A stretch of DNA of 64,000 bases from Stylophora pistillata. Its lineage: Eukaryota. The stretch covers positions 1 through 64,000 of the forward strand of contig NW_019217845.1 of assembly GCF_002571385.2 (NCBI RefSeq), given 5' to 3'. A model generated the notes under the pieces. The model had not been told where the DNA came from. It worked only from the letters and a program-made list of their open reading frames with translations, and did not search any database. The position numbers were made by a program, and so were the translations under genes. Shown piece after piece: positions 6,401 through 54,439 of this stretch; position 1 is the stretch's first letter; every line of letters starts with the position of its first letter.

Positions 6401-9400
6401 TTGAACAAGAGGGGTTGGCAGTTTTCCTTGCATCCTTTTGTTGATGGTAGCAAATGAAGAAGATGCAATGGAGCTCAGACCTGCTGCATTACCCTTATGT
6501 GTATTAACCACAATGCTGGATGCAGTCCCAGTTGGAACCGTCTGACCTGTGAGCACAATACCAGGAGCTGTCAAATGAACAACAATCAGTAAGAAGTAGT
6601 CCTTGTACATGAGCCAGTCAGTTAGTTTAATGACTGGTTATTTTGTTAAACTAAACTCCCAGAAGTAATTAACCAGTAACTTCTCCCCATAATATCATTA
6701 CATTATCCAATAAACAGGTAAGGAGAATACTCAAACTTATCAGGTACTGTAGAAGTTGTTAACTTGATCAAACACCAAATTCGCCTAACAAGGAAACATG
6801 CAGCAGGTAGAGGGGATAATTAACAATGATCATATCTTACGAGTTGAAGCCACGAACCTGACAAGCTCTTCTAGTCAGCTAAACAGCCCACAATCTTTTG
6901 ATAATGACTTACAGAGCTAACAAAATTCCAAACTGTACCGACCTGATGTCTTGAGTAAAGTTGTTGCAGGTGTGGTTCCTGTAGCTCCCTGAAGAGTTGC
7001 ACTTTTCTGAAGTGCTGCTGCTGCCTGAAATATATAGTGTAATTCATATAATATTCCTCAAGATACATGCCATCAGTTTCATAAGAGTCCCTGTTGAAAG
7101 TGGATGGCACCATCCACTGAATAAATTGCCTCCTATAAAACACGGGTTTAGAAACTACAGGCCCATTAATTCAATAAAATTTAGCTGTTGTTTAACAGAA
7201 CAGCCTAAACTATATTGAATTTGGCTAAATCTTTACCCTGAATGTCTATTTTTTTTGTGAACAATGTCAAGGGGGCTGAAAGTAAGCAGTGTACGAAAAT
7301 CTATTTAATGACAACAGCCCGGGTGCCCTCTTATAGAAAATACATAAGGCGATCTGATTGCAAAAAACCGCAGTTTGGGTTAGACCTTGTTTAAATAAAC
7401 GACCCTACATGTACATGATTTATCCCAGATCTAGCAATTTAAATGTCTACGAAGATGTGTTAGAGGAATGAAATGTAACTTACTGCTACAGATGTGGAGT
7501 TCAGTTGAGTGGTAGTGGTCAATTTTTGCGCTGGCAGTGACTGCACACTGGCTGGCAACTGTTTGGTTGCAGTCTGTTGTGGAAGCTGGGAGCTCTGTGG
7601 TTGTTGTAATTGTGCNNNNNNNNNNNNNNNNNNNNNNNNNNNNNNNNNNNNNNNNNNNNNNNNNNNNNNNNNNNNNNNNNNNNNNNNNNNNNNNNNNNNN
7701 NNNNNNNNNNNNNNNNNNNNNNNNNNNNNNNNNNNNNNNNNNNAAAATGAAAAACACAGGTCTGATCAAAAACCAACTGTATCAAATCCAGGCCTTGATT
7801 CAGTGATCTGATATATGCTTTTCTCTTCTGAGAGAAATGTTTCCTTTGCTTTTCAAATCAACAATGCACACCCACACCCTCTTCCTCCAGTCCCTGTAAA
7901 TGGCTTTTCAAGGGACAAGGGACAAGTGACTAACACTTGATCAACAGACTAGACAATAAAAAGGTTATTGCACTATAGAATATTACAAATTCTAAAGTTT
8001 TTCTTCTCCCTTTCAAAAAAAAAATAACTGCAATCACTGCCTTTTATCTTCCAAGTCAGAGAAGTTTTCAGACCATGATTTTCACTCTCTTATTTGAAGT
8101 TTAAGATTACTCAGGAACATGAGGGAAAAATACTTTATTGTGATGTATTCTCACATGGAATAGTGCAAGACAATTGACAATTGGGCACGTTTATGTATAA
8201 GAAATACTGTAAACAAACAAGATGAAACAAACTACTATAGCTTTAAAACACTGCAGGAAAAAGCACCACAAGTTACTTACAGCATTTTGAGCAGCTGCTG
8301 CTTTTTCTCTGGCAATTCGTTCTGCTTTCAGGGTAGCCAACTGAACTGGGTTCAAAGTCTTCTCCTCTGATATACCACTTGGAGAGCAGAAAATAAGAGT
8401 CATCAACAATGAAATATTTTGTAACTGACTTGGATTTTTATTGCTCATACAGGATTCCTACAGGAACGGGGCTTAATTTCATCAAACAGAGCTGGTCAAC
8501 TTTTGTACAGTGCTTTGACAAATTAATCAAGAACTCTTTAACCCTTTGATCTCAAAGAGCAAGGCTGTGCTCTAAGGAAAACTGAATGGAGCCCAGTGCT
8601 TTGAAACTGTGAAATCCAGGGTGCCCAGCATATGCTTTGTATGAAAAAACTAAAATTCCTAAGGCACCAGGGGCCACCGGGCACTGCTAGACCAAAGCCT
8701 TGAAGAGTGACTAACATTTAATTTCTCTTTACAATTTCACCCCCCCCCCCCCAATCACACAGGTAGCAAGAATAAAGGAAAGGCTTGATACTCAAAGAAG
8801 CTCTTGATTGTTAAACAAATTCTCCTTGTCAGCACCTTAGAAACCATGTGGAAAACAGTAAGGAGAATAGGCACACTGATATTAGAGCATAAAGTGTTAC
8901 CAGATTAAAACTGTCAGAGTCACTCATTAAGTGGTAAAGTTGCTTTTTACCTGGCCCTTAATATAGCAGAATGTGTGAAATTCTTTAGTTGCGGATCCAC
9001 CAACCTAAGAGTAAAAAATATGACAATTTAACAAAAAGGGACACTTGATGGAAAAAAAAAATCGTGTCATAAAACTGCTGTAAATTCTGACTAAACAAAT
9101 TACAACATAAATAAGAAAAGATAGCATGACAGTGAAATGAGCCCAGACTGTTTGTTCAGAGATCATACCATCTGACAGAGTAACAGCATTCTACAACAAA
9201 GAGCTTAAGGTGCCTTGTAGCTTTGTCTCCCAAACTCACTACTGTTCCTTTTACCTTCACTTTTTCTTTTATCTCAGTCTATCTTTTTTTCAGCAACAGA
9301 ATTATAAATTACTTACCTATGTTTTTATCATTCTGTCTCAAGATCAGCTGAATAGTAAATGCTATGTAGAAGCTTTTTAATAAGCTGTTTGGTATCATAA

Positions 9401-12400
9401 AATTGTTACATGAATTTAAATGAAGGTCTGATTTGACTGATCAAAGGAAACTGTTCATTGAGTAAGGTGCTTTCCTATTGTAGATCACAGCTTATAACAT
9501 GCAAAAATTATTGACTGCTAGTATTAGATTCCTAAATTCACACACTTGATTTTTTGAAAAAAAAATATATATATATATACAGTCAACAGGGTTGATCTCA
9601 TAAAAAAAATGGCGATGAAATGTAATGAAAAATCAAGTAAGAGAATGAGATTCTCACATTTGCCTGAGAGGTGGTTTTCTCTTTTGTGAAGTGCGTTTCA
9701 CAAGTTCAAACACAGATGATCGTACAACAGTTGGTGAGCGGCCACCATCTTGAGCCAGTATATGATGTGTCTTGAATGATCTTCCATTTGTGCCTTTAAT
9801 CTGATGAATGAAATGAGAATTAATAGTGCCATAAAAAATTGACTTCTTGTTGGTACTGTGAAGGTCATGTGTACTAATTGACTCAAGTAGATCAGTATTA
9901 TAGGGAAGTGTATTAATTTTGTAATTTGGTGTAATTTGGATTGAAATCCTGTGCACACACAGCAAGATTGATTTGAGGCCTTGCAAATGATTTCAGAACA
10001 AAATTGCAGAACAAGTTCAACGTCCAGTTTGTAATAAATTGATGCACATTTTGAAATTGAACAATATCATAGCCTGAATTTAGGATTTCGATGAGTACCA
10101 CCGTTGTATTGATCCAAAAGCAAAAAAAAGACCAGATAAGAAAAAAAAAAAAAAAAAGGAAAAAACTCTGAGTTGAGAAAAAAAGGCATTCTACAAAATC
10201 TGAAATCTGACTGATTGTTTTGTTTGAGTGTTCCATTTCATTGGCCAGAAAAATACAAGATTTAGGGCCATATGAAATAAACTGAACTGTTGAGAGCCAA
10301 TCATATGGCTAGGATTACCACTGATTTTGCTGTGTATGTAATAACTTCACATAAATGACTGTGTTTGTTCACCTTGACTGGTAGACTGTGAGGTTGGGTA
10401 ATGTAAGGCTGAGAAAATGACTTCAACCTTGTCTTCAGCTTCTTCAAGCTCTCCTCTACTACAGGCTAATCGTCCGGTAACAAACAATGACAAAAAGTAC
10501 ATTATTAGACATTTCGTTAACCAAGCTAGAAAATAAATGATCCTTGTAAATTTCCAGCTTCTTTTTTGCAATAGCTAAAATCACAGTCCACCTTCCAGGA
10601 CCCCATTTTTTTATTTCATCCATGGGTCAAATGGAAATTATTTAATAATTAGTTGTGAACAAATTGCTCAGCAGGAATGAAGAACTCTTAAAACTTTATC
10701 TCACTCCCAACATCTGGTTTGGTGGCTCAGTTGATAGCAGGGCCCAACTAGTATCTCGGAGGCATGGGTTCAAGTTCCATCTAAACCTAATTTTATCAGG
10801 CTCCTCTTCAGCAATTTCTTAAATTGCATTCCTTTTACAAGGATCATTTCTTTGCTTAAGGGCTAAGGGCTTAAGGGCCAACGCTCGAAACGTCAGCTTT
10901 TCTAATGGTTACGGTGGCCAATTTACCACTTCAACTTTGTTGATATATCCAAATTATTTCTTTGCTTAGTTTTCATCTACAGGTCACATGAGAATTAATA
11001 ATGATAATAATAATGATCATAATAATTATAATAATAATAATAACAATTTAATAATTTACTGACTTATATTGTGCAATTATCAATACAAAAACTTTCAATT
11101 GCACATTACAAGTTGTTACCCTGAATTAAGTTGACCAGAATTAACCTACTTCTCTTTTGTTTTTACCAGGGTCCTTAGTTTCAGTTAAATCCAACTTTGG
11201 TCTGCTGAAATGAATAATAAGGAGAAAAAAGGAGAAAAAGGGAGACTGGCTCTTACCAAGGGAACTTTCCCCTCCTCTCTGGGAATTATCATGTTCATGT
11301 AGCGATCACGGCACTGAAAAAAATGAATTTAAAAGTTCAGCACAATGGCTGCTGTTGTACAAATGAAACTACATATAAAGGAAAAATCTAATATGGAATT
11401 AATCAAAAGACATATGACCTGTATGGATTTCCTCTCGCTCATGATGCACAGAGCTACTACTTACAATCAGTATGATAATTATTCTTTTTGGCATAATCTG
11501 CTAATTTTCCTGCCCAATTATAAAGTGAAATTTGATTCTCACAATCCAACAAAGTCACAAGGGCTTACCTGTCGAGCTGAGCGGAATGTTCGACTTGTGA
11601 GATTGACAATGTCGCAGACAATGTCCCAGTTGGGTGTTTGACTTGGAACATTTACGGCAAGATCCACTGGTAATTCTTGTAATGAATTAACAGCCTTTGA
11701 AATGAATTGGAGAGAAAAGGTTGGCAATTTGAGTGACTTCAGTCTGAAGCTGCTAAAAATGGCAATGGTGGATAGTTAATGTTACACATCAGAATAACAT
11801 TTCAAGGAAGTTACGGCAAATACCTGTAATAAAGCCCAGTCTTCATGGATTAACCATTCTGGAACTCCAGTACCCTTTAGAGAGATACTTAACAACTGTA
11901 ATACTCACTTACAAATGGTACTTAGGTTTGCATTAATTATGATGAAAGTAGCAACAAACTATTTAATAAAGCAATCTGGATAAATTGATCTTGGGTTGCA
12001 CCAATAATATCGAGGGAACAAGGAATGGCTGCAAAAACTTTGGTTCATACCTTGTCAAAACCACTTTATTGTGTTCTTAAGTCAGGCAACTTTATAGTCA
12101 CATTGTCCTTCCCCACCCAAGGGTATAATAGGGCACTGGCAAAAATCATCACTGAAAACTTACAAAATCTTGAAGGGTAACATGCAATGGGCAAGAGCCC
12201 CAGCAAGGGAATTAGAGGCAATTCTAGCTAGCTTCTTACAGTCACCACATTATGTACCTGGGAATAGTCTGCTTGTTTCACTATACTGGGTGCAACTTGC
12301 TGCTTCATGTGTTTCATTTTTGACTTCTTACTCAGTGAACTGCGACGAGCTCTGGCAAATGGATCATATCCATTTCTGTCAAATACTGATGTAGGTCGGC

Positions 12401-13909
12401 TGACACGATCTCTGTATCAGAAGGAGTAAAAAATTTATAAGGAAAAACATTTTCATATCATTTGAAACATGTTCTCACCCTTTGCTCCTTTGCAGTTGAG
12501 ATGAGAGGGGAGGGGGGGGGAGGGGAAACAAAGTAACAATTCTGAAAAAAAACAGCAAACAGGTTAAGTCTAAACAAGCTAAGTGGCCAACAAATGCCAG
12601 CAAAATCTTGTGTCTGTAGCAAACAATATACAGATTTAGCCAAGCCTAAAAGCAGAGCTTGCATTTTTTTTCCCCCCCTCACATCTCAAGGGCACAATGC
12701 CTTGCCTTATATACTGGGTAACTGTATTGCTGTAATAGCTTTATGTGTGTTTTAGCTTAGTATAATTCTATTTGTACTATATTAGGGTGTGTGTGTGTGT
12801 GTGTGTGTGTGCGTCTTTTTTTCTTTTTTATTATTTTCTATTTTTCCTCTTAATTTCTACTTTGAATGTAAACGTAAGAAAATGCTTTAAATAAATTTAT
12901 TAAAAAAAAATTAAACAAAAAAAAACACCTTGCCCCTGCCAGGACTTGAACCTGGGTCACGCGACCCAGAGCCCAGTGCACTGACCACTGGACTACTGGA
13001 CAAAGCTGTGGCATTTGCATACCCGCGGTACATTTGACAGCACATGCTAAAAGTAGCACCTTGTACGGACACCCGTACAGTCATAAGTCCAAATTTTTTC
13101 GGCTTGGTGGGTTATTACTACCATTTTGTTTAATTATGGGGCTTTGCTGCACACACTGTGTGTACTCCAAGCTCTGCTTTTACACTGAAAAAAGAGAGAA
13201 AGCTAACAAAGATGATCGATTCAAACTACTAGTAGTTTACCTCATAATAATGACNNNNNNNNNNNNNNNNNNNNNNNNNNNNNNNNNNNNNNNNNNNNNN
13301 NNNNNNNNNNNNNNNNNNNNNNNNNNNNNNNNNNNNNNNNNNNNNNNNNNNNNNNNNNNNNNNNNNNNNNNNNNNNNNNNNNNNNNNNNNNNNNNNNNNN
13401 NNNNNNNNNNNNNNNNNNNNNNNNNNNNNNNNNNNNNNNNNNNNNNNNNNNNNNNNNNNNNNNNNNNNNNNNNNNNNNNNNNNNNNNNNNNNNNNNNNNN
13501 NNNNNNNNNNNNNNNNNNNNNNNNNNNNNNNNNNNNNNNNNNNNNNNNNNNNNNNNNNNNNNNNNNNNNNNNNNNNNNNNNNNNNNNNNNNNNNNNNNNN
13601 NNNNNNNNNNNNNNNNNNNNNNNNNNNNNNNNNNNNNNNNNNNNNNNNNNNNNNNNNNNNNNNNNNNNNNNNNNNNNNNNNNNNNGGCAGGGACACCGCA
13701 ACAGCTTGCGCCAATTACTGCAGACCCAGAAAACCCACCCATCCCAACCCAGGGGAGGACATCCACCACACAGTAATCTCGTGCATGGGAAATTAACATC
13801 TCCTACCCCTAACTCTGCAGGAGATGCGGCCTACGGTTTATTCGTCCTTATCCGAGAAGACTAGAATATCTATCCATTTCTTGATATTATAGAAAGGTAG
13901 CAAATTCTT

Positions 13910-13941
<32 letters not shown>

Positions 13942-16900
13942 AGCTGGGCTTGAACCCTGGACCTCCCGCAAAACAGTCTGGCGTTTTGTTAATGTCGGGA
14001 GCTAGAGGCCATCTGGATTTAACTTGTACTGTATTCTATTGGTTAAGATTTCGAAAGCACCCAAGAGAAGTTGCCTTCACTGCTAATAAACTTGCCTGGT
14101 GCCCAGCCTTTAAAAAATAAACCCATTGTGCGATGTACTTCAGTCTCATAACTACTTACTTGGTCAAATAAAGAGGTGGGAGACGGTTTGTTGCCATAGG
14201 TGATGTCTCGTACAAGAATGCCAAGGTTGGGTCCACATATATTTCATCTTGTCCATCCCGGGGAGGGGTGGGTGGGGTCCAGATCTGCAAGAGAGAATTC
14301 ATGGTGGACTCACTTACCCCTGATTGGTCATCATAGGAAATTGTTTTTGTATGTTACTTTATTGGAAGAACTCTTTCTACACTCTATGTAAACACTGTGT
14401 TTATAATGCAAAAGAAAATCCACACAGCAGAAAGCATTTAACCCTTTGACCCCAAAGAGTGACCAGCATCTAATTTCTCCTTACAATATCACCCATCAAT
14501 CCCTTATTTAGGTCATGAGAACAAAGGAAATGATCACCAACTAAAGAAGCTCTGATTGTTGAACAAATTCTCCTCACCAGCTTCTTAGGAAATGACTTGA
14601 GAACAGTATGGAGAATATGCATACTGGTGTTCAGGTGTAACGGGATAATGGTGAATTTAATACTTCATAATCAAGCAGAAAGTATAAGTAAGAAATATGT
14701 TTATGCCACGAAAGGCTCCCTTCTCTGTGCATGCCATAGGCTGTGATCAGTTGCATAATCTCTGATTTTTGATGACATTTACAAAGTTGTACGAAAGTTG
14801 AGGCAATACAACTCCATCATGCTTACAATAGGTCATTTTACAGTTGTGTACTTTGTTGCCAAGCCTTTGATTCAGAGTGAGGCTGAAGGTGACCTTGTTG
14901 TGATAGAGACCTGTATCTACTTAGCATGATAACAAAGTGATTTACATTTGAAAGGCAGCAAGGTTTGTATCATAACAAGGTCACCCCTAGCCTCACTCCC
15001 ATTCAAAGGCTTGGCAACCAAGCACACAACTGTAAAATGGACTATTATCTAACCACTTTCCTTACAGAGCTGTCTTTATCTGCTAAATGAGTGGTGCATA
15101 CAAATTCTAAACGATTCAATACTTACTGGCATCTCTTCGCCAGTAGCATCATTTACATACACCTGATGAAAACAATGATAAGACCCCACTAATCAATCAC
15201 TCTCCAACTGATACTAAACTCATCTAATATTATCACCAATTTGCCAATTATTAAAGAGTGGAGAATGCTAGCAATTGGATAAGTCTCTGTCAGGGCCCAG
15301 TTTTTCAAAGAGCAGCTAATGCTATCCAACAGATAAAACACTCTCCAGTGGATATGTGTTTAAAGATGTGCTACCCTCTCCACTGGATAGAGATTTCTCC
15401 AGTGGATAGTGCCATCCAACCTTTGAACAACTGGGGCCTGGTGGAGAACACATGATTAACTACACTGGGTAGCAAGTTATCCCTTGAATAGTGTTATATA
15501 CCATTGAATAACTGGGCTCAGATTGATAACAACAAGTGGTCCAATTAAATTGCAGCAGCTCGATTCGTGTGTGCATACACAAGTGTGAAACAGAGGGAAT
15601 TTCTCTCTATACAATATTCAAACTATCCCACTGAAAATGTTACAAAACTACTGATTCACAAGCCAGCTGTGGGTTCAAGAAGATAAGAAGCACTTGTGAA
15701 CTTTGGGGAGTGCTCAAGAAGCTAGAGTTGCTCTTAGCTGTAACTCCACCAACTCTCATGTATGTTTGTCTTCAAAATTCCCACATGCTTCATATCTTGA
15801 TAGATGCATGTTGAGGTATGAGCCCATTGTTACCCTTAGCAGAGTACATCAAATTGCTCTGGTCAATAAGCAAGTTGTTCTTAAAAGAAATTCTATAGTC
15901 TACACAACACCAAATCAAAAGACAGAGCAATTTGCAAAATTTCATGTGAAAAAGGACTGGTTCATTAAGGGTGCTGCTCCAAATAGGAGCACTCTTTAGG
16001 AATTTCTTCCCCTCCCCCCCCCTTGCACAAGGTCTCTGTTTCATCCTCCATGACATCACAGACACCTCTTCCACTTCTGAAGCTCAATTCCTCTTTGACA
16101 ACCAAACAAAGGACAAGGACATTAACATCCACATACTGAAGCTGTAACTTTACCTCCAAACACTGTTCAAGATGTGTGAAAGAAAAGAAATGCTTTTGCT
16201 ATTATATAGACATTAATGAAATACCATGTGGGGTTTTGCACACCATGATATCTTCCACACATCAAAAGAACACCCCTGTTATGGTTGCATAATAAATTGC
16301 GCCTTTCACAAATTGAAATGGTTTGGTTTGGTATTTCATTATTGATATAACAAATCAGATCCTTACATGAATGAGCAGGATACCAAATTTCTTTCATCCA
16401 GTTAAATCTTTCACTTGTTTTCTGCACTCACTTGGAGAAAAATTTCATATCTCCCCCTCCCCCCCCCCCCCAAACAAATGTAAAATCCTCTACCAACATA
16501 AAATAGGGAAAGGGAAGGAACAGAGGAGGGGGGGAGGGAGTTAAGGATAAGCCAGTAGCTCTGTGTGGCTGTTCAGCAGATTTGGTTCCAAAGTGCCTTG
16601 AAATGCCTGTCACTTTTCTACCTTCTCTTGATTGGATGGATGGCGTAAGGCTAGCATGCAGTAACAATGAACCGCAGAGTGCTACTCCTACAAGACCACA
16701 GAGATGTATTATTAGGCTTACTCTGGTGTCAACAAGTTTTGAGAGCCAGTGGAAAGAGTTCACATGACTCAATGTTGAAAAGTAATTTTAGACACACAGT
16801 TATAAGTCTGGTCGGTTAGGTGTTATAACTGTTGCTGTTACTGCAAACCAAAGAATCAAATGCCACATTAAAAAAAAAAAACAAAAAAATTCCATCAAAG

Positions 16901-19900
16901 CTACTTCACAAAAAACAGTTTCACCAAGGACAATGCAAAAAATGGTACAGCAGTTTATTTACATTCCCTCCAGAAAAAGCACAAAGTTTTGCACCATGAA
17001 AGAAAGTGGGGAAAGGTATGTTTTTACTAACAAACACTAACACAACTGCATTAAACAAAACTAGCAAACAAGCTAGCCAAAGCCCCATCAAAGAAGTAAT
17101 GAAAAGGATTTGATGAAAATATGGACAAGATAAATTTCATCTTGGGAAGTCCAAGACAACTTTGAACACCAAAAATATAACACTGGCAATGCTAACACTG
17201 TACAGCCATCCAAAACCACTGGCGAACATTGAACTAACAAGCAAACTAGGGCTGGTTAATCCAAAAGTTTCAAAATATGATACAAATGCCAGCAATCAAT
17301 CAAGAGAAGATACAAAAAAATGACAGACACCCTTAACATTCAAAGATATTTTTTTATTTGAAAGCTTTGACAGCACTTTTCTTCCACAAAAGTACCAAAT
17401 CCATACAGTTCTCTTGTCAGGTACCTTCTTTTAAATTCAATAATTTTGGCAAATGCTCTCTATAAATAATTGCCTACAATAAATGCCTTGTAACCAATTT
17501 TCTCATAGATCTCTTTTACAGGGAATTCCTTAACAAGAAAGATGGAAAATTATGAACCACCCTTCCATAATTTTTAACCAGAAAACTGACAATTGAATAA
17601 GTATACCTTACCTTTAAGTAATTTCTTTTACATTTGGGAACAAATGGTCTGTGATTTTGTCAAGAACTAATTGGTTTCATTTTCACCAGCAGGGAGACTG
17701 CAAATTTCAAAGGGTTATTCTCACAGGACAATCTCCCATGTAACAAGCTAATTTCCTTTAACAGTCAATTTCTTCTTGCACTTTTTCTCGAGCTACTACA
17801 ACTACTACTTCTACTGCTTGCTCTGGATGAAGTACGACTGGTACTGCGGCTGTTCCTGACAGCCACTTGAACCTCATCACTTTGGGCTTCTGATTTTAAG
17901 TTCTTTTTGGCTCGATTAGATGTTAGGGAATTTCTACTAGAGCACTTGCTATTTAGTTTTGATCTACGCGATTTTGACTTATTCTTTTTAACCTGCAAGG
18001 ATTCCTCTCGTGTGTATGTGTACAAGATTTCATCCTCCTCTTCAGCAACTCTTTTTTCTTCTTCTTTCTTCAAAGCCTGCAGGTGGCCAAGCTCCCAGTC
18101 CTTCTTTGCCATTTCGACTTCATCCTGTGAATTGTAAGTTTAGACATGAAGAATACACAATCTTTTCCCACTAAACAACAATCCAAGCCTCAACCACTTC
18201 GTCCCTGTGTAACTAGAACAATTTTGGCCACTAGTTTTGCAGTGTCATGGGTTTCATTAAATGGGGGTTACTGTTGGTCTGCTATTGTCTAAAAGACCTT
18301 TTACCTCTGTCTGTTAATTAAGCTTGTGAGCAGGCTCTTCTTTTTGGGTTTAACCCTTTTGGACAAAACCACCCATGACACCATCCACAGCCACTTGTGG
18401 AAAAAGTTATGGAAACCCCTGGATGAAGCTCCCCAATTTTGTCACCCATGTTTGGTTGTAACATTTTTATATCTTATTGTTTATAGTTTGAAGTTCAAGT
18501 GAGATGCCTATGCTCCTTACCTTAGCTGCTTTGATTTGTTCCAGTGTGATGTAAGCACCAGACGATTCCAAGAATCGAATTGCGTATCTTTCCACAGCAG
18601 TCATCTTTGATAAGAATTCAAAAGAAAGTTAAAATAAGACATGTCTATTACAGCGAGGACTGTAAATTCTCCCATAAAATCCATGGAAAAATTTGCTTGC
18701 TTTGCACTTTTTCCTTTGTTCACTCCTTTTGTGAGCACAATTGTTCTCACCTGGCTCTCCAGAGCAGACAGTTCCTCCTCCACTTTAGATTGCTCTTCTT
18801 CCTAAAGAATTTAAAAACATTTGTAAATTTATTCTAATTTTACCTGTAATTAAATCCAGATACAATTAAATCCAGATACAGCCAACACAAGCAATGGACT
18901 GTTGCTGACAGGGTAAACCCTAAAAGGAGCAAAGTGCTCCAGTAACCACCTCCAGTAACTGCCTACCGGTTAGCTCAATCGATAGAGCGCTGGACTGTTG
19001 TGCAGGAGGTCGAGGGTTTGAGCCCCGGCCGGACCAACACTCAAGGTCTTAAAATAATTGAGAAGAATATGCTGCCTTTCTATAACGTCAAGAAATGGTT
19101 AGATATTCTAGTCTTCTTGGATAGGGACGAATAAATGGAGGTCCCGTCTCCTGCAGGGTTAGGGGCAGGAGACGTTAATTTCCCACGCACGAGATTACTG
19201 TGCGATGGATGTCCTCCCCTGGCTTGGGATGGGTGGGTTTACTGGGCCCGCAGTAATTGGCGCAAGCTGTTGCGGTGTCCCTGCCTGTCGGCAAAGCTAC
19301 ATAAATCAATCAAAACCAAAAGACTCTGACAAAGAGATCACACTTCAACTCGCACCTTCGCAAAAAATCACAAAAGCCAGTAATCTGCCCTCATCGCATT
19401 CAAAATGATACCCAAGTGTTATGCTTGCCTGCCAAAATGGCAGCACAACATTTCTAGAAGCAATTTCATCATCTCCCTTCCTCAGAGATTATAACTCTTT
19501 TTTGCCTGAATGCAATGTAGCCATTACTGCATGTTAGATGAGGGAATCAAAAGAAAATGACTCTTTCAGACTAACCTTTCCATCTTCACTCAGAGGGATT
19601 CCTTCATCAAATTCAGCCAATTCTGCTGCCTCTTCAGCCTTAGCTCTTGTAGCAGCACAAGCATCCTGTTCATCTTCAGCTTTGAATAATGCCTGAAAGA
19701 GGTGTTTTCAAAGGAACTTAACTTAAACTGCCTCTCTACGTGTAAACAAAGCAGGTGTAATTTACCTGCTCCAGCAAGCTCTGAGACACTTTTCCACCTC
19801 CTGTCTTCGTTCTACCAACTTCTGCAGTTGTCTCAGGCTCTTTTTGAGATTCTTCTGTCACAACTTCATCAATGGGCTCTGTCTTGGTAATGCTAGGCTG

Positions 19901-22900
19901 GGTGTTGACAGCTTCAGAAGATGGTTCAATGGTGAAGAGATCCTTTAGTGTAGTCTGCAAAGTGAAGAACAAAAAATTAAACATGAAACGCTGTTCAGAT
20001 TGTGATACAACTCTACATAAATTTCAAGGTTTGTACAGATTTCAAACTTATAAGATGTCACGACTTTCCAGAAACTTTCATGACTTGTTATCCACATGGT
20101 CAAGATACTGTTTGCAATATGTTGCGAAAATAATCAATCCAGGTATTACATGTTCTGTTTTTTTGCATAAGTCACTCTCAGACATTTCCAATTATTTTTC
20201 ATGACCAAAATACAAATTCTGTGACTTTCCAGGCCAGGAATATGATACCGCAACATTCCAAAACTTTTCAAGTTTTCTGTAAGATGGATAACTCCCTGAA
20301 GTGATCAACATGTGACTTCTCCCTATAATATCTACACATCATCAAGCAAACAGCTAATGAGAATACTCAAGCTTATCAGGTAGAGGTTGTTATCTTGATC
20401 TAACACAAATTATTGGAACTAATTCACTAGGAGATGTGTAGCAGTTGGAGGGGAGAATTAAAAATCACATCTTGGGAGTAAAAAGGGTTAAACCCTGCAG
20501 GTGGCTCTAGAACTTAGCAGCATATCACAACTACAAATTCTGTCTGTGTTGGCAATGTTTACCCTTAGTTTCTTACTTTCATACTTTCAAAGAAAATCCA
20601 TTAAAACATCGTGTATTAGGCCCGGGATATTTGCCGATTTGAACAATGTTGTGGATGGTATAACAAAGTTACAAAATAATACAATGCCTTCAGGTGGCGT
20701 ATTTCAACTAACCTCTTTGAAAAATGCTGTGGTAAAGTTTCCACCCTCAATAGCAATATCACCCAGCATTCTTTTCTGATTTGCTTTCTTCAGGATGTTC
20801 TCCTCAATTGTCCTCTCACTAATCAGTCTGTAGATGTGGACATCTCTGGTTTGACCAATGCGATGACATCTGTCTTGTGCTTGGGCATCCATTGTGGGAT
20901 TCCAGTCACTGTCGTAAAAGATGACCGTGTCTGCGCCAGTGAGATTGACACCTAGTCCGCCACTGCGGGTGGACAGGATGAAGCAGAATATGCGAGTATC
21001 AGCATTGAAGCGCTCCATCAAGACCTGTCTTTGCTCCACTCTTGTTGTACCATCAAGCCTCAGGTAGATGTAACCATGGTAATTTAAAAAGCTCTCTAGA
21101 ACATCCAGCATCTTAGTCATTTGGGTAAAGATCAGAGCTCTGCAAATATCAAGTGGAAGATTAACAAATTAATTGTAACTATCAGTATCAAGTTAACTAT
21201 TTGACCATAGCTCAAATGTCAACTTATTTGCTTTGTAAAATATGAAGAATAAGTTAACATAATAAAGATCCACATCTAGACTTACAATAACAAAATATGT
21301 TACATCACAACTGACTGATTGGTTTTCACAAAGCTTTAGACTAAACTAGACATGTTGCCAAGGTTGATTTTAATTTTTTTTTTTACCTGTGCTTTCCAGC
21401 TTTTAGTCTTCTTAGAAGTAGATCAAGAGTTTGAAGCTTGCCTGCAGTAAAACAAACCACAATCACTGATCTTATGCACTAGCTAAAATCAATACAAAAA
21501 AATTCATGGTGCTGATACACAAGTACCACATTTTAAAACAGCCCTTGCATTAATGCTTTTGTTCAGCTCTAGGCATACGTTCTTACCACAATCATACTGA
21601 ATAAGCCGCACTTCTGGAAACTGCATCTTCAAGCCTCTAGCAATTGGATGCATAAAAGATGTCTTGGGCATCAGTTCACCATGAAGTGTCTCCTCGAGGT
21701 TCTGCATCTTTGACAAGTAGGATGGCGGAGGATGGGACATATGTAGTTTGATGGGAGGAGCTTCCACAGATGGAATAGCAAACACAAACCTGACAAGAAA
21801 CGATTAGTTCTTAACCATTTGACCCCTAAAAGTGACTAACACCTAATTTCTCCTTGCAATATCACCCCAGAAGTCAAACATTAAGGTCATGAGAATAAAG
21901 GAAATGATCACCAACTCAAGGTCATGATTGTAAACAAAAATTCTCCTTGTCAGCACCTTAAGAAAAGTATAGAGAACAGTATGGAGAATATGCATACTGA
22001 TGTTAGTATAGAGACTATGTATCTTGTGTTGGGGTATAAGGGTTAATAATGGTTGAATAAACTATGACAGCATTTTGCCACATTTAATGCTGACAGCTCA
22101 GAACTTCTACATTTATCAGGGTCAATCAAAAACACGGACCTCGAAGTATAGAACTCATCACACGCTGTCCCTTCATCAAAAAGATTTTTTCTTGAATAAC
22201 TCAAGTAATGGCTATGCACGCACAAATTTGTGTATTTCTCCTAAAATTAATGAAGCTGTCCAGGAGTCTCCTTGATTTCTTTAACTGCAATAGTCCATTT
22301 TACAGTTGTGTGCTTGGTTGCCAAGCCTTTGAATGGGAGTGAGGCTAGGGTTGACCTTGTTATGATACAAACCTTGCTGCCTTTCAAATGTAAATCACTT
22401 TGTTATTATGCTAAGTAGATACAGGTCTCTATCATGACAAGGTCACCTTCAGCCTCACTCTGAATCAAAGACTTGGCAACTAAGTACAACTGTAAAATGG
22501 CCTATTGCTATAAGTAAGGCAGATAATAAACTGCTCAAAAACACAATCAAAAAGTGAACAGAAAAAAGTCTTATTACAAAGTAATCTGGGTTATTTTTCA
22601 AGATATCTTTAATCCAATTCTGGTATCATAATATTGGTGAGCCAGAAAAATAAAAACACACATTAATTTTTTACCTGCTAAAAATATCCTTCATTTCTGT
22701 CACTCTGTCTTCTGGGGTCTTGAAAATACTTGTCAAATATTCAGAACATCTCACTGTACTCCACACATCCTTAACAACAGACACAGCCTGCACCAAATCC
22801 AGCCCATAGACTGGTTGTGCTTGAGAATGACGATTGTTGACTCGTAAAATGCGCACAAGCTTCTGCTTTCTTTCCTTGAGCCTCTTCTCTGAAAGATTCT

Positions 22901-25900
22901 CCTAGCAGAGCATATTCAACTAAGTTAATTCCAGTTCTGTCTTCTTATTTTCTCCAGTAAAACTATCCTATTGATCCTTGCCAGCTCAGAACTTCAAGTT
23001 TTATCACAGATTTACTCTCAACAACACGGACCTGAAGTTTCACTCATCACATGCTGACAAGAAACCCCTAGTCACTCCCCTTTTTTAACCCTAACACTGC
23101 TCCCAGGGAGGGACTAGCATCTATGTTCTCCTTACACTAGTGTATCTAAAAGATATAGTGATGCTGCAGCACGTTCTGTTGCTAGTGACATAATTTATAC
23201 AGTGATTCATCTACCTGTGTGTTCCAAGAATTACATTGAAAAACCTTATAATATCACACCTGGGTCAAAGACTGCTAACTATCAACTTTAACAGTACCAT
23301 AGGAAATTTACAGTTCAAAATGTTTGAAGAATATGCATACTAATGAGTGAGCCTGAAGGAAAACAAGAGACTGAGAGTCTTCAAGGTCTAAAACTGACAA
23401 AGATAACATTTTGACTTAACATTTACATTGCTATAAAGGCGATAACAAGTCAACAAAAACATTGACAAAGTCTGACTAAAATATTTGCAGGTAAATTCAT
23501 ATTTCTGAACCAGTGCCTTTCATGTCTTTTGTAGGGATGAATGACTACATGCAGCTTTGACATAGAAACATACCAAGAAAAATGGTGAATCTTTGTTGGC
23601 TTGGGTGACAGCACGAGCAGGAAGTGATGTTTTACTTTCCAAGGCAATTCGCTTGGTTGGAGACACTGGTTTTGATTCAGGATGGGGAAGTCTAATAGCT
23701 ACACCATCTTGAACAGTTTGTCCTACTGGTGCTCGGTTTTGAGCTGCTGGAAAGCTTGCGCTACTTGGAACAGACTGATGCGACTCTACAGCAACACCAG
23801 TGGCAGAGGGAACAGAAGCTGACCAGGGCGACTGCCCAGCTGCCAAATGTTGACGCTGAGATTCATAGCCTGCTCCAGGTCCTGGATAGGGTGGAGGTGG
23901 GGGCATTTCCCTTCCAAATCCCGACAGAAGTATCCTGGATGCAGGAAAGCCGGTAGGAGCACCAGAACTGTGCCGTGTTGAGTAGCTGTGAGGCTGTTGC
24001 CCTTCAGGAGTTCCAGGCGGCATTCTTCCAGGTAATGATCCACCAAAACTTGGGCGTTGCGAATGGTCCTGAGACCACCCTGGAGGAATTCCATAAGGAA
24101 TAGCACCAGGAGTGTATGTGGGGTGCACTCTGTGTTGTTGATGAGCAGAGTAAGGGGGAGGGGGTACATGTGGCATGTGTTGTCCACTTGGATGAATACT
24201 GTTGGATATATCTGTCTTGACACTGCCTAGGGGAGGCACAGGATGCCCAGAAAGTGAAATCCTGCGAGGTTTCACTGGAGGAACCAGCCTCCTGGTTGGT
24301 TCAGGGTAGGAGTCTATTTCTACAATCATTTTTGCAGGTGTCTGAAGAGTCTGTGAACGATAAGCTGCATAGCTCGTTACTGTCCTTTCTATGTCTGCTA
24401 CACACAAGTTCAAGTAACCAAAGCTGACATGTTTAAGGGGGTTATAATCAAGAGCTCTAAGCACCAATGACGCAGTGTAAAACTCAATGCCCTCCATGTA
24501 GAATGGTGAAACTGTTGGTCTTGGTTCAAACAAGTCGGGATGATTACAAACCTGAAAGAGTATATATTTATTTATCTATTCTACAATAAGAACCAGTAAG
24601 TAGCAGGCATGCTCTTAGAAAGGGCATAAACTTCGTACAACTTTGTGTTTGCTTTTGATTATGCAGTTGGCTTGTCCTCGCGAGAGTAATCCTGAAAAGG
24701 ACTTTAGTGGATGAAATTTGAAGTCATAATCAGAGTCAAGTGCCTCTGTGATTGTGTGACTTCCACACAGGTTGTCCATATGTCTGTCAGAGACAATGAC
24801 AACAGTCTTTTAAAGACTACATATGAATAAAGGCTGATAGTTTCGAAAGAAACTATTTGGGGCTGCGTCGGTGGGAGTAACGAAATAATTTGGATATATC
24901 AACAAAGTTGAAATGGTAAATTGGCCACCGTAACGATTACAAAAGCTGACGTTTCGAGCGTTAGCCCTTCGTCGGAGCGAATAGAGGAATTGTGGGTTGT
25001 GTGTGCTTTTAAAGGCAGAAAATGGAGCTACATTATTGGTGGGAACATGGCAACGAGAAAAACAAGAACAAATTAGTGGAATGAAAAGCGTTCGTTGATC
25101 CCTGTGGGATTTAAACTGCCAGTTTGAAAGATGAGCTTTTGTTCAAGATTTTTACGGCTTTCCGTGCTACCTAAGTGTAAGGAAAGACTGCAGATTGCCA
25201 TATGTTGCTTGGAATGATTAGGTAAATTAAAATGTTTAGTGACTTTTCACAGCCTCCGCTCATTTCATTCAAACGCGACAAAAACATAGGCAATTTTTTG
25301 GTCAGAAGTTCTTTTCAGACTAATGATCAACCAGGCACTTTTAAATGCGCTCGTGCACAATGCAAAACGTGTCCTTTTATTCACAACACTGATAAAATAT
25401 CGGGACCTAAACGATCCATTAAGATCACCGATCACTTCACGTGCACCTCCGCCAATGTAATCTATTGCATAACTTGCATGTATTGCCAAAAGATATACAT
25501 CGGTGAAACAGGTAGAAGACTAGGTGACCGATTCCGAGAACACCTTTGAGACGTGGAAAGGAATGACAAGGACACATCAAAACCAGTCGCTAGACATTTT
25601 AATTTACCTAATCATTCTAAGCAACATATGGCAATCTGCAGTCTTTCCTTACACTTGGGTAGCACGGAAAGCCGTAAAAATATTGATCAAAAGTTCATCT
25701 TTCAAACAGGCAGTCTAAATCCCACAGGGACCAATGAACGCTTTTCATTCCACTAATTTATTCTTGTTTTTCTTGTTGCCATGTTCCCACCAATAATGTA
25801 GCTCCATTTTCTGCCTCTAAAAGTACACACAGCCCACAATTCCTCTATTCGCTCCAACAAAGGGCTAATGCTCGAAACATCAGTTTTGTAATCGTTACGG

Positions 25901-36434: not shown

Positions 36435-54439
<18,005 letters not shown>

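What the first reader, a model, noticed from the sequence alone, without database searches (positions are those of the whole stretch)
14160..18124. One domino gene, two remodellers: donor read-through would give a DOM-B/SRCAP-like isoform, splicing gives DOM-A/EP400
Seen: after ...[11 protein letters not shown] the weak donor (CAG|GTTAAA) either splices to [12 protein letters not shown]|IWTPPTPP..., leading to SANT and poly-Q (EP400-like), or reads through in frame for 75 K/R/S-rich codons to a stop at 17765. Beyond the stop lies ~1 kb of minus-strand T-rich, 3'UTR-like sequence with AATAAA signals. Established: Drosophila domino makes DOM-A (EP400/Tip60 complex) and DOM-B (SRCAP-like, H2A.Z deposition) by alternative C-termini, while vertebrates use two genes. 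From memory the fly isoforms diverge at the equivalent TY[ST]R...Q point; this needs an alignment. Inference: the isoform switch could predate the cnidarian-bilaterian split.
Basis: partly seen in the sequence, partly recalled or inferred. Interest (0 to 1): 0.8.

Follow-up and report, generated by a model that had tools for sequence, protein, structure and literature searches.

The report
Coral domino gene makes two remodellers
A stony-coral genome has one domino-type chromatin-remodeller gene that can end early by reading through a splice site (a short SRCAP/DOM-B-like form) or splice on to an EP400/DOM-A-like tail, and the same switch point occurs from sponges to insects, so the fly's two-isoform trick looks ancestral to animals.

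Summary
Exon 18124-17993 (minus strand) ends ...TYTREESLQ at the donor CAG|GTTAAA. Unspliced, the frame stays open for 75 K/R/S-rich codons to a TGA at 17767-17765. Spliced, it joins microexon 15162-15127, exon 14284-14160, an EP400-type SANT exon and a poly-Q exon.

- **Conservation.** The read-through frame is open in at least 14 other coral sequences. Neighbouring intron is unalignable, tail dN/dS is about 0.1-0.3, and the stop position and an AATAAA about 400 nt downstream are conserved.
- **RNA evidence.** A 7,084-nt Montipora-like transcript contig encodes a complete 2,191-aa protein. It is spliced upstream, unspliced at this donor, and ends in the tail.
- **Gene number.** This assembly shows only one SWR1-class gene. 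Its ATPase is SRCAP-like and its C-terminus EP400-like.
- **Distribution.** Mollusc, echinoderm, chelicerate, insect and sponge proteins diverge at the same ...Q|V point.

Three things are not shown:
- Complex composition.
- Sequence homology of the tail to bilaterian tails.

Published work reports the switch only in arthropods. I rate this a new member of a known kind, with evolutionary weight.

The parts
3479..35740 (-). The single domino-type (SWR1/SRCAP/EP400-class) gene, from the start ATG (35740/35737) to at least the poly-Q exon
   Evidence: tblastn of the Montipora RefSeq isoform X1 (P0234) maps about 33 exons co-linearly.
33359..34024 (-). HSA domain, split over two exons
   Evidence: Pfam HSA hits at 33911-34024 and 33359-33460. 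The only other HSA gene in the assembly is the BRG1-like gene on contig C430.
28980..29315 (-). ATPase N-lobe exon
   Evidence: Best PDB match is human SRCAP (180 bits) against EP400 (135 bits).
20713..21141 (-). Helicase-C exon
   Evidence: SRCAP 288 bits, yeast Swr1 246 bits, EP400 149 bits.
17993..18124 (-). Branch exon (44 codons, phase 0/0), the last exon shared by both isoforms, ending ...TYTREESLQ
   Evidence: It aligns weakly to EP400 at about 2184-2230 (E 0.05). Mean pairwise nucleotide identity among five corals is 81-86%.
17987..17992 (-). Suboptimal 5' splice site GTTAAA. The same bases encode V-K, the first residues of the short isoform's tail
   Evidence: CAG|GTTAAAAA is invariant in five coral genomes, and CAG|GTTAAGAA occurs in a more distant contig.
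17765..17992 (-). Read-through coding tail (75 codons, K/R/S-rich) plus the TGA stop
   Evidence: Open in at least 14 coral ORFs. dN/dS is about 0.1-0.3 with dS 0.6-1.3. It is present at the end of the complete 2,191-aa transcript ORF P0286.
17330..17764 (-). Inferred 3'UTR of the short isoform
   Evidence: Conservation falls to 37-44% just after the stop and rises to 53-68% towards the poly(A) signal. The Montipora-like transcript covers at least 323 nt of the homologous stretch.
17353..17358 (-). AATAAA poly(A) signal, invariant across corals
   Evidence: It lies 368-416 nt after the stop in all five coral genomes and aligns in one column.
17297..17313 (-). Invariant U/GU-rich 17-mer, 40-56 nt past the AATAAA, in the position of a downstream element
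   Evidence: Identical in five corals. Its function is inferred.
17147..17215 (-). Two further invariant non-coding blocks (17215-17198 and 17163-17147) of unknown role
   Evidence: There is no Rfam match, no covariation, and the indels are not in threes.
15127..15162 (-). 36-nt microexon [12 protein letters not shown], the first exon specific to the long isoform
   Evidence: It is conserved in four other coral genomes and present in the Montipora RefSeq protein.
14160..14284 (-). Exon IWTPPTPP..., specific to the long isoform
   Evidence: It matches EP400 2247-2285 at E 3e-7 and is unique in the assembly.
11569..11694 (-). Second half of the EP400-type SANT domain (a TRRAP-contacting region in human TIP60)
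   Evidence: It matches EP400 2379-2420 at E 7e-8. The TRRAP contacts are described in bioRxiv 10.1101/2024.07.30.605802.
3479..4414 (-). Q-rich C-terminal exon
   Evidence: A 312-aa open frame rich in Q runs, matched by the Montipora protein at residues 2667-2847.

Best explanation
The window carries the only SWR1-class remodeller gene found in this stony-coral assembly. It has an HSA domain, a split ATPase most like SRCAP/Swr1, and a C-terminal half like EP400/DOM-A.

Two mRNAs are made at the exon ending at 17993.

- **Long form.** If the suboptimal donor CAG|GTTAAA is used, the transcript continues through a 36-nt microexon into the exons for the SANT/TRRAP-binding region and the poly-Q tail. 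This gives an EP400/DOM-A-like protein of roughly 2,950 aa, judged from the Montipora orthologue.
- **Short form.** If the donor is not used, the exon extends as a composite terminal exon. It adds 75 more codons of basic, serine-rich tail and a stop, then a 3'UTR of about 410-440 nt, with cleavage after the conserved AATAAA at 17358-17353. This gives a protein of roughly 2,200 aa. It keeps HSA and ATPase but lacks everything that in human EP400 contacts TRRAP.

Shown:
- the anatomy of both paths;
- purifying selection on the tail;
- the conserved stop and poly(A) signal;
- a full-length short-form mRNA in a Montipora-like coral;
- a single gene in this assembly;
- the identical branch point across animal phyla.

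Inferred:
- **Use in this species.** That the site is used here.
- **Mechanism.** That the choice is a competition between splicing and intronic polyadenylation.
- **Function.** That the short form scaffolds a SWR1/SRCAP-type H2A.Z-exchange complex while the long form scaffolds a NuA4/TIP60-type complex. I put this last step at about 0.55.
For: - **Conservation profile.** Across five coral genomes with saturated synonymous divergence, the upstream intron is 24-36% identical, the exon 81-86%, the tail 56-79%, and the stretch after the stop 37-44%. Identity then rises to 53-76% around an invariant AATAAA.
- **Selection on the tail.** dN/dS is 0.1-0.3. All indels are in threes. Frame 0 has no stops, against 0-3 and 12-19 in the other frames.
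- **Breadth.** 15 coral-like ORFs share the tail, and most end in one motif...SSCSSSKRITRRTKFPDEI.
- **Transcript.** P0286/L032 is a 7,084-nt contig. It aligns to genomic L029 as six blocks at 98-100% identity, with five introns removed. It runs unbroken through the donor, the tail, the stop and 323 nt of 3'UTR. A marine metatranscriptome contig, L031, shows a similar short-tail mRNA.
- **Long path.** It is confirmed by RefSeq Montipora isoform X1 and by EP400 matches to the downstream exons.
- **Single gene.** HSA is found only here and in a BRG1-like gene. The next-best ATPase hits are CHD, ISWI, ERCC6, HELLS, SMARCAD1 and ATRX types.
- **Same branch point elsewhere.** It occurs in other phyla, including same-species A/B pairs that are nearly identical upstream.
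- **TRRAP contacts.** EP400 residues 2312-2523 contact TRRAP, and all lie after the branch point.
Against:
- The transcript contig stops about 50 nt before the AATAAA, so no poly(A) junction was seen. A late-spliced intron could in principle give a similar contig.
- The coral tail is short, lacks AT-hooks, and lacks the protostome motif SNPNLVIRTRRAS.
- A tail-only profile finds no bilaterian tail above shuffled controls. Homology of the switch therefore rests on position, phase, the leading V(K/H/N)K and composition.
- RefSeq annotates only long isoforms for Montipora.
- In this window's lineage a TGA removes the last 7 residues of the tail motif shared by most of the other corals aligned.
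- Conserved blocks continue beyond the presumed cleavage site and are unexplained.
Confidence: 0.82

Rival explanations
1. The read-through is intron retention with no protein role. On this reading it is a slowly spliced or deliberately retained intron that lowers output of the long isoform, through nuclear retention or decay. The transcript contig would simply capture that intermediate.
For: The intron is long (2.8 kb here, 2.5-4 kb in other corals) and its donor is suboptimal. The Montipora-like contig ends without a poly(A) tail. RefSeq lists no short isoform for Montipora.
Against: Retention alone does not explain the following:
- an open frame kept in at least 14 lineages, with dN/dS of 0.1-0.3;
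- indels always in threes;
- a conserved stop position and C-terminal motif;
- an invariant AATAAA 370-415 nt downstream.

In addition, the contig ends near that signal instead of running on into the intron.
Confidence: 0.07
2. The tail region is conserved as RNA or DNA, for example as splicing enhancers or silencers for the weak donor and the microexon. On this reading its open frame is a by-product.
For: Strongly conserved non-coding blocks do exist in the same intron (17313-17147). Tail dS is somewhat lower than exon dS.
Against: Substitutions concentrate at synonymous sites. Length changes keep the frame. The two other frames are full of stops. No Rfam family and no covariation were found.
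Confidence: 0.04
3. The short coral isoform is real but arose independently of the bilaterian DOM-B/SRCAP-type tails. The same phase-0 intron would have been exploited more than once, so the switch would not be ancestral.
For: No significant tail similarity exists between corals and bilaterians, or between sea-urchin tails and vertebrate SRCAP. Coral tails are about 75 aa against 200-2,000 aa elsewhere. A leading V is forced by any GT read-through.
Against: The same intron, phase and read-through mode occur in a sponge, cnidarians, molluscs, a brachiopod, an annelid, echinoderms, chelicerates and insects. Tails are basic and serine-rich everywhere. Coral-like tails end in R(I/V/T)TR(R/H)(T/S), which faintly resembles the protostome VIRTRRAS motif. 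Disordered tails lose detectable similarity quickly.
Confidence: 0.2
4. The 115-aa ORF from the ATG at 18112 is a small independent gene. Prokaryote-style gene callers list it that way.
For: The ORF starts with ATG in most corals and was called as a separate product on genomic contigs.
Against: Its first 40 residues are an internal exon of the remodeller, with a canonical acceptor at 18126-18125. The transcript joins that exon to all upstream exons. The ATG codes a conserved internal Met.
Confidence: 0.01

Closest known systems
Drosophila domino isoforms DOM-A and DOM-B (Ruhf 2001; Boerner & Becker 2016; Scacchetti et al. 2020, PMC7239659)
   Same: One gene gives two forms. They share the N-terminus with HSA and the SWR1-type ATPase. 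The long form has SANT plus a Q-rich tail, and the short form has an unstructured tail. The insect forms sampled here (Glossina, beetles, Hymenoptera, a cricket) diverge right after ...TYSREDATNQ. That is the column where the coral forms diverge.
   Different: The coral tail is about 75 aa against about 490 aa in fly DOM-B, with no detectable similarity. The D. melanogaster protein itself was not among the sequences retrieved. Complex composition in the coral is untested. The paper reports the switch only for arthropods, and its digest frames it as convergent with the two-gene solution.
Human SRCAP (PDB 6IGM and others)
   Same: The coral ATPase lobes match SRCAP best. The short isoform, like SRCAP, lacks the SANT/TRRAP-binding part and ends in a basic, serine-rich, presumably disordered tail.
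   Different: SRCAP is a separate gene with a C-terminus of about 1,000 aa bearing AT-hooks. The coral tail has none. SRCAP's copy of the branch exon has decayed (RKDLDQAKEE...).
Human EP400 in the TIP60 complex (PDB 8QR1, 9CAE; bioRxiv 10.1101/2024.07.30.605802)
   Same: The branch exon, the WTPPTPP exon and the SANT exon of the coral gene match only EP400 in the PDB. A Q-rich C-terminus is also shared.
   Different: EP400's own ATPase is much more diverged from the coral one than SRCAP's is (149 against 288 bits). EP400 is a separate vertebrate paralogue with no known read-through form.
RefSeq helicase domino-like isoforms X1/X2 of Montipora capricornis and M. foliosa
   Same: These are orthologues with the same exon chain and the same two junctions after the branch exon.
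   Different: Only long isoforms are annotated. The short form appears only as an unannotated transcript ORF, P0286.
Invertebrate 'helicase domino / SRCAP-like / DOM-like' short forms in RefSeq and GenBank (Biomphalaria, Mytilus, Mya, Octopus, Lingula, Owenia, sea urchins, sea stars, Limulus, spiders)
   Same: They branch at the same point by reading through the same donor (...Q|V...). Same-species long and short forms are nearly identical upstream.
   Different: Their tails are 200-2,000 aa. Many carry AT-hooks and, in protostomes, the motif SNPNLVIRTRRAS. Both are absent from corals.

Membership tests
Domino-type single gene with A/B isoform switch | One SWR1-class gene per genome, with HSA plus a split Snf2 ATPase | tested here: met
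   HSA is found only in this gene and in a BRG1-like gene. The HSA-flanking exon and the WTPPTPP exon are unique in the assembly. The other ATPase hits belong to CHD, ISWI, ERCC6, HELLS, SMARCAD1 and ATRX types. Limit: one draft assembly, searched exon by exon.
Domino-type single gene with A/B isoform switch | A long isoform with a SANT domain and a Q-rich C-terminus | tested here: met
   The SANT exon 11694-11569 matches EP400 2379-2420. The Q-rich exon is at 4414-3479. The chain is confirmed by the Montipora RefSeq protein. Pfam itself calls no SANT domain at E below 0.01.
Domino-type single gene with A/B isoform switch | A short isoform that diverges after the ATPase at the same residue as in insects | tested here: met
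   Coral forms diverge at ...REE(S/A)LQ|V. Insect, mollusc, echinoderm, chelicerate and sponge forms diverge at ...(N/S)Q|V. D. melanogaster itself was not retrieved, so the dipteran Glossina stands in.
Domino-type single gene with A/B isoform switch | The short-form mRNA is actually made | tested here: inconclusive
   A full-length short-form transcript exists in a Montipora-like coral, and a similar one exists in a metatranscriptome.
Domino-type single gene with A/B isoform switch | The short form builds an ARP6-containing H2A.Z-exchange complex and the long form builds a TIP60/TRRAP acetyltransferase complex | not testable with these tools
   There is only the structural argument that all TRRAP-contacting segments of EP400 lie after the branch point.
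SRCAP / DOM-B-type C-terminal tails | Sequence similarity of the tail, AT-hooks (KRGRPRK-type), or the protostome SNPNLVIRTRRAS motif | tested here: not met
   A tail-only HMM scores no bilaterian tail above shuffles. The coral tails have no AT-hook and no such motif. Only the basic, serine-rich composition and a faint R(I/V)TRR(T) resemblance are shared.
Composite terminal exon by intronic polyadenylation | A conserved poly(A) signal inside the intron, downstream of an in-frame stop | tested here: met
   AATAAA lies 368-416 nt after the stop in five corals and aligns in one column. An invariant U/GU-rich block follows it.
Composite terminal exon by intronic polyadenylation | Poly(A) junctions at that site | not tested
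The transcript contig ends about 50 nt short of the signal.

The most novel reading that the evidence does not exclude
The choice between splicing and reading through this one phase-0 donor is ancestral to animals. A single fused Swr1-Eaf1-type gene in the first metazoans already produced both a SWR1-type and a NuA4/TIP60-type scaffold. That state persists in sponges, cnidarians, lophotrochozoans, echinoderms and arthropods. Vertebrate SRCAP and EP400 would then be the two isoforms frozen into separate paralogues after duplication (subfunctionalisation). On this reading the fly arrangement is the ancestral state and is not a convergent solution.
Probability: 0.65. Interest if true: 0.75.

Novelty: new member of a known kind. 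Interest (0 to 1): 0.68.

Why it matters
How cells separate H2A.Z deposition (SWR1/SRCAP) from H4/H2A acetylation (NuA4/TIP60) has been told as three independent solutions: two genes in yeast, two paralogues in vertebrates, and splice isoforms in flies.

A conserved, selected short isoform in corals shares its branch residue with insects, molluscs, echinoderms and a sponge. That points to the isoform solution as the ancestral animal state and to the vertebrate paralogues as a derived partition of it.

It also gives a compact, testable case of regulated intronic polyadenylation in an early-branching animal. The parts are defined: a suboptimal donor, a conserved poly(A) signal, and invariant flanking elements.

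Finally, it flags a systematic annotation gap. The short form is missing from coral RefSeq, and in at least one sea urchin the locus is split into two gene models.

Tried and rejected
- **RNA family or structure.** Rfam on 16700-17800 gave nothing. RNAalifold on the conserved intronic blocks gave no compensatory pairs and an unfavourable covariation term.
- **Tail homology.**
  - A tail-only HMM against 193 bilaterian post-branch segments gave nothing above shuffles.
  - blastp of a 1,250-aa sea-urchin tail against vertebrate SRCAP and other tails gave no hits.
- **Other blanks.**
  - The PDB search of exon 12413-12258 found nothing.
  - Cluster look-ups gave no names for the short cnidarian-like ORFs.
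  - The search of earlier findings gave nothing relevant.
  - Literature searches for cnidarian domino isoforms, or for SRCAP/EP400 subfunctionalisation, found nothing.
- **Second-paralogue candidates rejected by their motifs.** C36 is CHD6-9-like and C5 is ISWI. C216 is ERCC6 and C461 is ERCC6L-like. C31 is CHD1, C577 is HELLS and C133 is CHD3/4. C78 is SMARCAD1, C382 is ATRX and C430 is BRG1. INO80 itself was not located.
- **Joined model.** Exons were searched one by one by reference. Natural proteins returned by the tools (Montipora RefSeq, the transcript ORF P0286) served as proxies. Junction peptides of 42 aa were computed locally only, to place splice sites.
- **'Exceptionally weak donor' toned down.** Several other donors in this gene also deviate from consensus.

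Full report
**What is in the sequence**

A large gene runs on the minus strand from an ATG at 35740/35737 to at least 3479. It has an AG acceptor at 18126-18125 and 44 codons, is phase 0 at both ends, and ends ...[11 protein letters not shown]. The next bases are GTTAAA.

Read through, the frame stays open for exactly 75 codons to a TGA at 17767-17765. The tail has 24 Ser, 22 Lys+Arg and 3 acidic residues. The other two frames carry 3 and 14 stops. Only 0.5% of shuffles of these bases stay open.

Spliced, the exon joins a 36-nt microexon (15162-15127, [12 protein letters not shown], donor GTAAGT) and then 14284-14160 (IWTPPTPP...).

**What the gene is**

Searched exon by exon against solved structures:
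- The ATPase lobes match human SRCAP best: 288 and 180 bits, against 149 and 135 for EP400.
- The WTPPTPP exon and a SANT exon at 11694-11569 match only EP400, at residues 2247-2285 and 2379-2420.
- The branch exon matches EP400 only weakly (E 0.05), at about residues 2184-2230.
- A 312-aa Q-rich exon lies at 4414-3479.

This mix of an SRCAP-like motor and an EP400-like C-terminus is the Drosophila domino architecture.

The 398-Mb assembly shows no second gene of this class.
- Pfam HSA hits only this gene and a BRG1-like gene on C430.
- The WTPPTPP exon and the exon that follows the HSA region are unique.
- The next-best ATPase hits are CHD, ISWI, ERCC6, HELLS, SMARCAD1, ATRX and BRG1 types, judged by their motifs.

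The limit is one draft assembly, searched exon-wise.

**Is the read-through real?**

A word search with the 124-aa open frame returned 15 coral-like ORFs of 110-170 aa that carry the tail. Most of them share an ending...SSCSSSKR(I/V)TRRTKFPDE(I).

Four other coral genomes (L025, L026, L027, L029/L030) have the same anatomy. They show a branch exon, a 70-78-codon tail, a stop, 2.5-4 kb of intron, the microexon and the WTPPTPP exon.

These genomes are deeply diverged, since synonymous sites in the exon are saturated. The conservation profile is informative:

| Region | Mean pairwise identity |
|---|---|
| Upstream intron | 24-36% |
| Branch exon | 81-86% |
| Tail | 56-79% |
| First ~150 nt after the stop | 37-44% |
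| Towards the AATAAA (17358-17353) | 53-76% |

The AATAAA is invariant and lies 368-416 nt after the stop in all five genomes. An invariant U/GU-rich 17-mer follows 40-56 nt later (17313-17297).

Nei-Gojobori estimates give tail dN/dS of about 0.1-0.3 at dS 0.6-1.3, and all length differences are whole codons. The donor CAG|GTTAAAAA is identical in all five. This is the signature of a translated alternative last exon with its own poly(A) site.

**RNA evidence**

The protein collection nevertheless holds P0286, a complete 2,191-aa ORF on a 7,084-nt assembled contig (L032).
- It starts at the same Met as the RefSeq Montipora protein and runs through HSA and the ATPase.
- It ends ...SREDALQVKKNK...KRITRRTTFTDKI, then a stop.
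- Against genomic L029 it aligns at 98-100% identity as six blocks, with five introns removed.
- It is continuous from the branch-exon acceptor through the donor, the tail, the stop and 323 nt of 3'UTR.

It is therefore a mature, fully spliced short-form mRNA from a Montipora-like coral. The contig ends about 50 nt before the conserved AATAAA, so the poly(A) junction itself is not seen.

A marine metatranscriptome contig (L031) likewise joins helicase-C-to-branch-exon sequence, which spans several exons in corals, to a roughly 115-aa basic tail and a 3'UTR.

RefSeq Montipora isoforms X1 and X2 are long forms.

**Comparison across animals**

A profile of the coral ORFs, followed by two region-restricted searches, retrieved about 300 proteins. 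They fall into two classes that part immediately after the conserved ...TY(S/T)R(E/D)..(N/S/L)(Q/K).
- **Class A** continues (V/I/M)(F/Y/W)...MP(M/I)W.PPTPP. This is the microexon followed by the EP400-type exons.
- **Class B** continues V(K/H/N/S)K... into a basic, serine-rich tail. The leading V is what a read-through GT gives.

Named class-B proteins come from these groups:
- **Molluscs:** gastropods, bivalves and Octopus.
- **Other lophotrochozoans:** Lingula and Owenia.
- **Echinoderms:** sea urchins, sea stars and a sea cucumber.
- **Chelicerates:** Limulus, a scorpion and a spider.
- **Insects:** a cricket, lice, beetles, Hymenoptera and the dipteran Glossina.
- **Sponge:** an Oscarella pearsei transcriptome protein.

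Long and short forms from the same species are nearly identical for 600 aa upstream and split at that residue. The mismatch counts are 1/600 for Biomphalaria glabrata, 3/600 for Mytilus galloprovincialis and 7/600 for S. purpuratus.

Vertebrate EP400 is class A. Vertebrate SRCAP shares the preceding ...PIERYAMKFLE... exon, has a decayed branch exon, and continues into a basic tail with AT-hooks. AT-hooks also occur in mollusc and echinoderm class-B tails.

The D. melanogaster sequence itself was not retrieved. The literature gives only 'identical for the first 2008 residues'.

**Limits of the homology**

Beyond position, phase, the first residues and composition, I could not show that the coral tail is homologous to bilaterian tails.
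- A tail-only HMM scores none of them above shuffled controls.
- A sea-urchin tail finds nothing in SRCAP.
- Coral tails lack AT-hooks. They also lack the motif (W/F)SNPNLVIRTRRAS, which 45 class-B tails share; all the named ones are from protostomes.

The coral-like endings R(I/V/T)TR(R/H)(T/S) resemble that motif only faintly. Independent recruitment of the same intron therefore remains possible. I put it at about 0.2.

**How it most likely works**

The pre-mRNA faces a choice at a suboptimal donor, which has T at +3 and no G at +5. The bases of that donor are also constrained as codons.
- **Splicing** removes the in-frame stop and the intronic poly(A) site. The result is the long, EP400/DOM-A-like protein.
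- **Failure to splice**, followed by cleavage after the conserved AATAAA, yields the short protein.

In human TIP60, EP400 residues 2312-2321, 2366-2433, 2443-2475 and 2494-2523 hold TRRAP (bioRxiv 10.1101/2024.07.30.605802). All of these map after the branch point. The short form keeps the RUVBL/ATPase/HSA body but cannot tether the TRRAP-acetyltransferase lobe. That is the DOM-B/SRCAP condition.

This last step, and the idea that the invariant blocks at 17313-17147 tune the choice, are inferences. The donor is not uniquely weak in this gene.

**Novelty**

The DOM-A/DOM-B switch is established in Drosophila. Scacchetti et al. 2020 note two-C-terminus isoforms in several insects and a spider and suggest spread 'throughout the Arthropoda'. 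The paper's digest calls the fly and mammalian arrangements convergent.

I found no paper that extends the switch to cnidarians, or that proposes SRCAP and EP400 as partitioned isoforms. The library searched is not exhaustive.

The coral case is a new member of a known kind. Its value is that, together with the sponge and bilaterian data gathered here, it makes an ancestral origin of the switch the simplest reading.

Exons were searched singly by reference, and natural proteins returned by the tools were used for whole-protein comparisons.

Noticed in passing
window 17313-17297, 17215-17198, 17163-17147, 17081-17072 (minus strand): Blocks of 10-18 nt just beyond the conserved AATAAA, inside the intron, are invariant or nearly so in five deeply diverged corals. 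Indels between them are not in threes. There is no Rfam hit and no covariation. The role is unknown; a downstream element or a splicing/polyadenylation regulator is possible.
   Followed up: partly
window 17767-17765: This lineage ends the tail at ...RKSARRN with a TGA. Most other corals aligned read on for 7 more codons (...TRRTKFPDEI). The closest relative, P0001, has TGG there and ends ...ARRNWLW. The extreme C-terminus is therefore dispensable or evolving in this clade.
   Followed up: partly
proteins P0131, P0173, P0181, P0218, P0227, P0228, P0233, P0235 and about 35 unnamed ORFs: Class-B (short-isoform) tails of molluscs, a brachiopod, an annelid, chelicerates and a cricket share an almost invariant motif, (W/F)SNPNLVIRTRRAS. 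It fits an RxRxxS kinase-type consensus. As far as I could find it is undescribed, and it is absent from corals, echinoderms and vertebrate SRCAP.
   Followed up: partly
P0221 and P0158 (Lytechinus pictus, same 70.6-Mb chromosome record): RefSeq names one model 'helicase SRCAP-like' (ending in the read-through tail). It names another, on the same chromosome, 'E1A-binding protein p400-like' (the long-isoform-specific part). This looks like one domino locus split into two gene models.
   Followed up: no
P0184 (Magallana gigas isoform X5): This oyster isoform joins ...AYNQ directly to MWAPPTPP and skips the 12-residue microexon. The microexon is therefore itself alternative in at least one mollusc.
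   Followed up: no
window 13255-13685 and 13108-13070: A 431-N gap sits in the intron after exon 14284-14160. About 24 residues of the Montipora protein (2168-2191) have only a weak, partial match near 13108. One small exon of the long isoform is unresolved here.
   Followed up: partly
L029 and L030 (ENA ERZ25067889, contig ctg49358, 429401-441757 and 465586-477942): The same Montipora-like locus appears twice, in opposite orientation and about 24 kb apart, on one assembled contig. This is probably an assembly fold-back or haplotig and not a true duplication.
   Followed up: no
window 49270-50318 (+ strand): A second, unrelated Snf2 helicase-C exon pair is hit weakly by the domino queries. Other notes of this scan place a RAD54B gene there.
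   Followed up: no
L024 (Logan SRR29297744, 959 nt): In this more distant cnidarian-like contig, three exons that are separate in corals are contiguous and run into an 81-codon tail, while intron-like sequence lies upstream. These are the exon before the ERYA exon, the ERYA exon itself and the branch exon. The explanation is either intron loss in that genome or a partly spliced transcript; it is undecided.
   Followed up: partly
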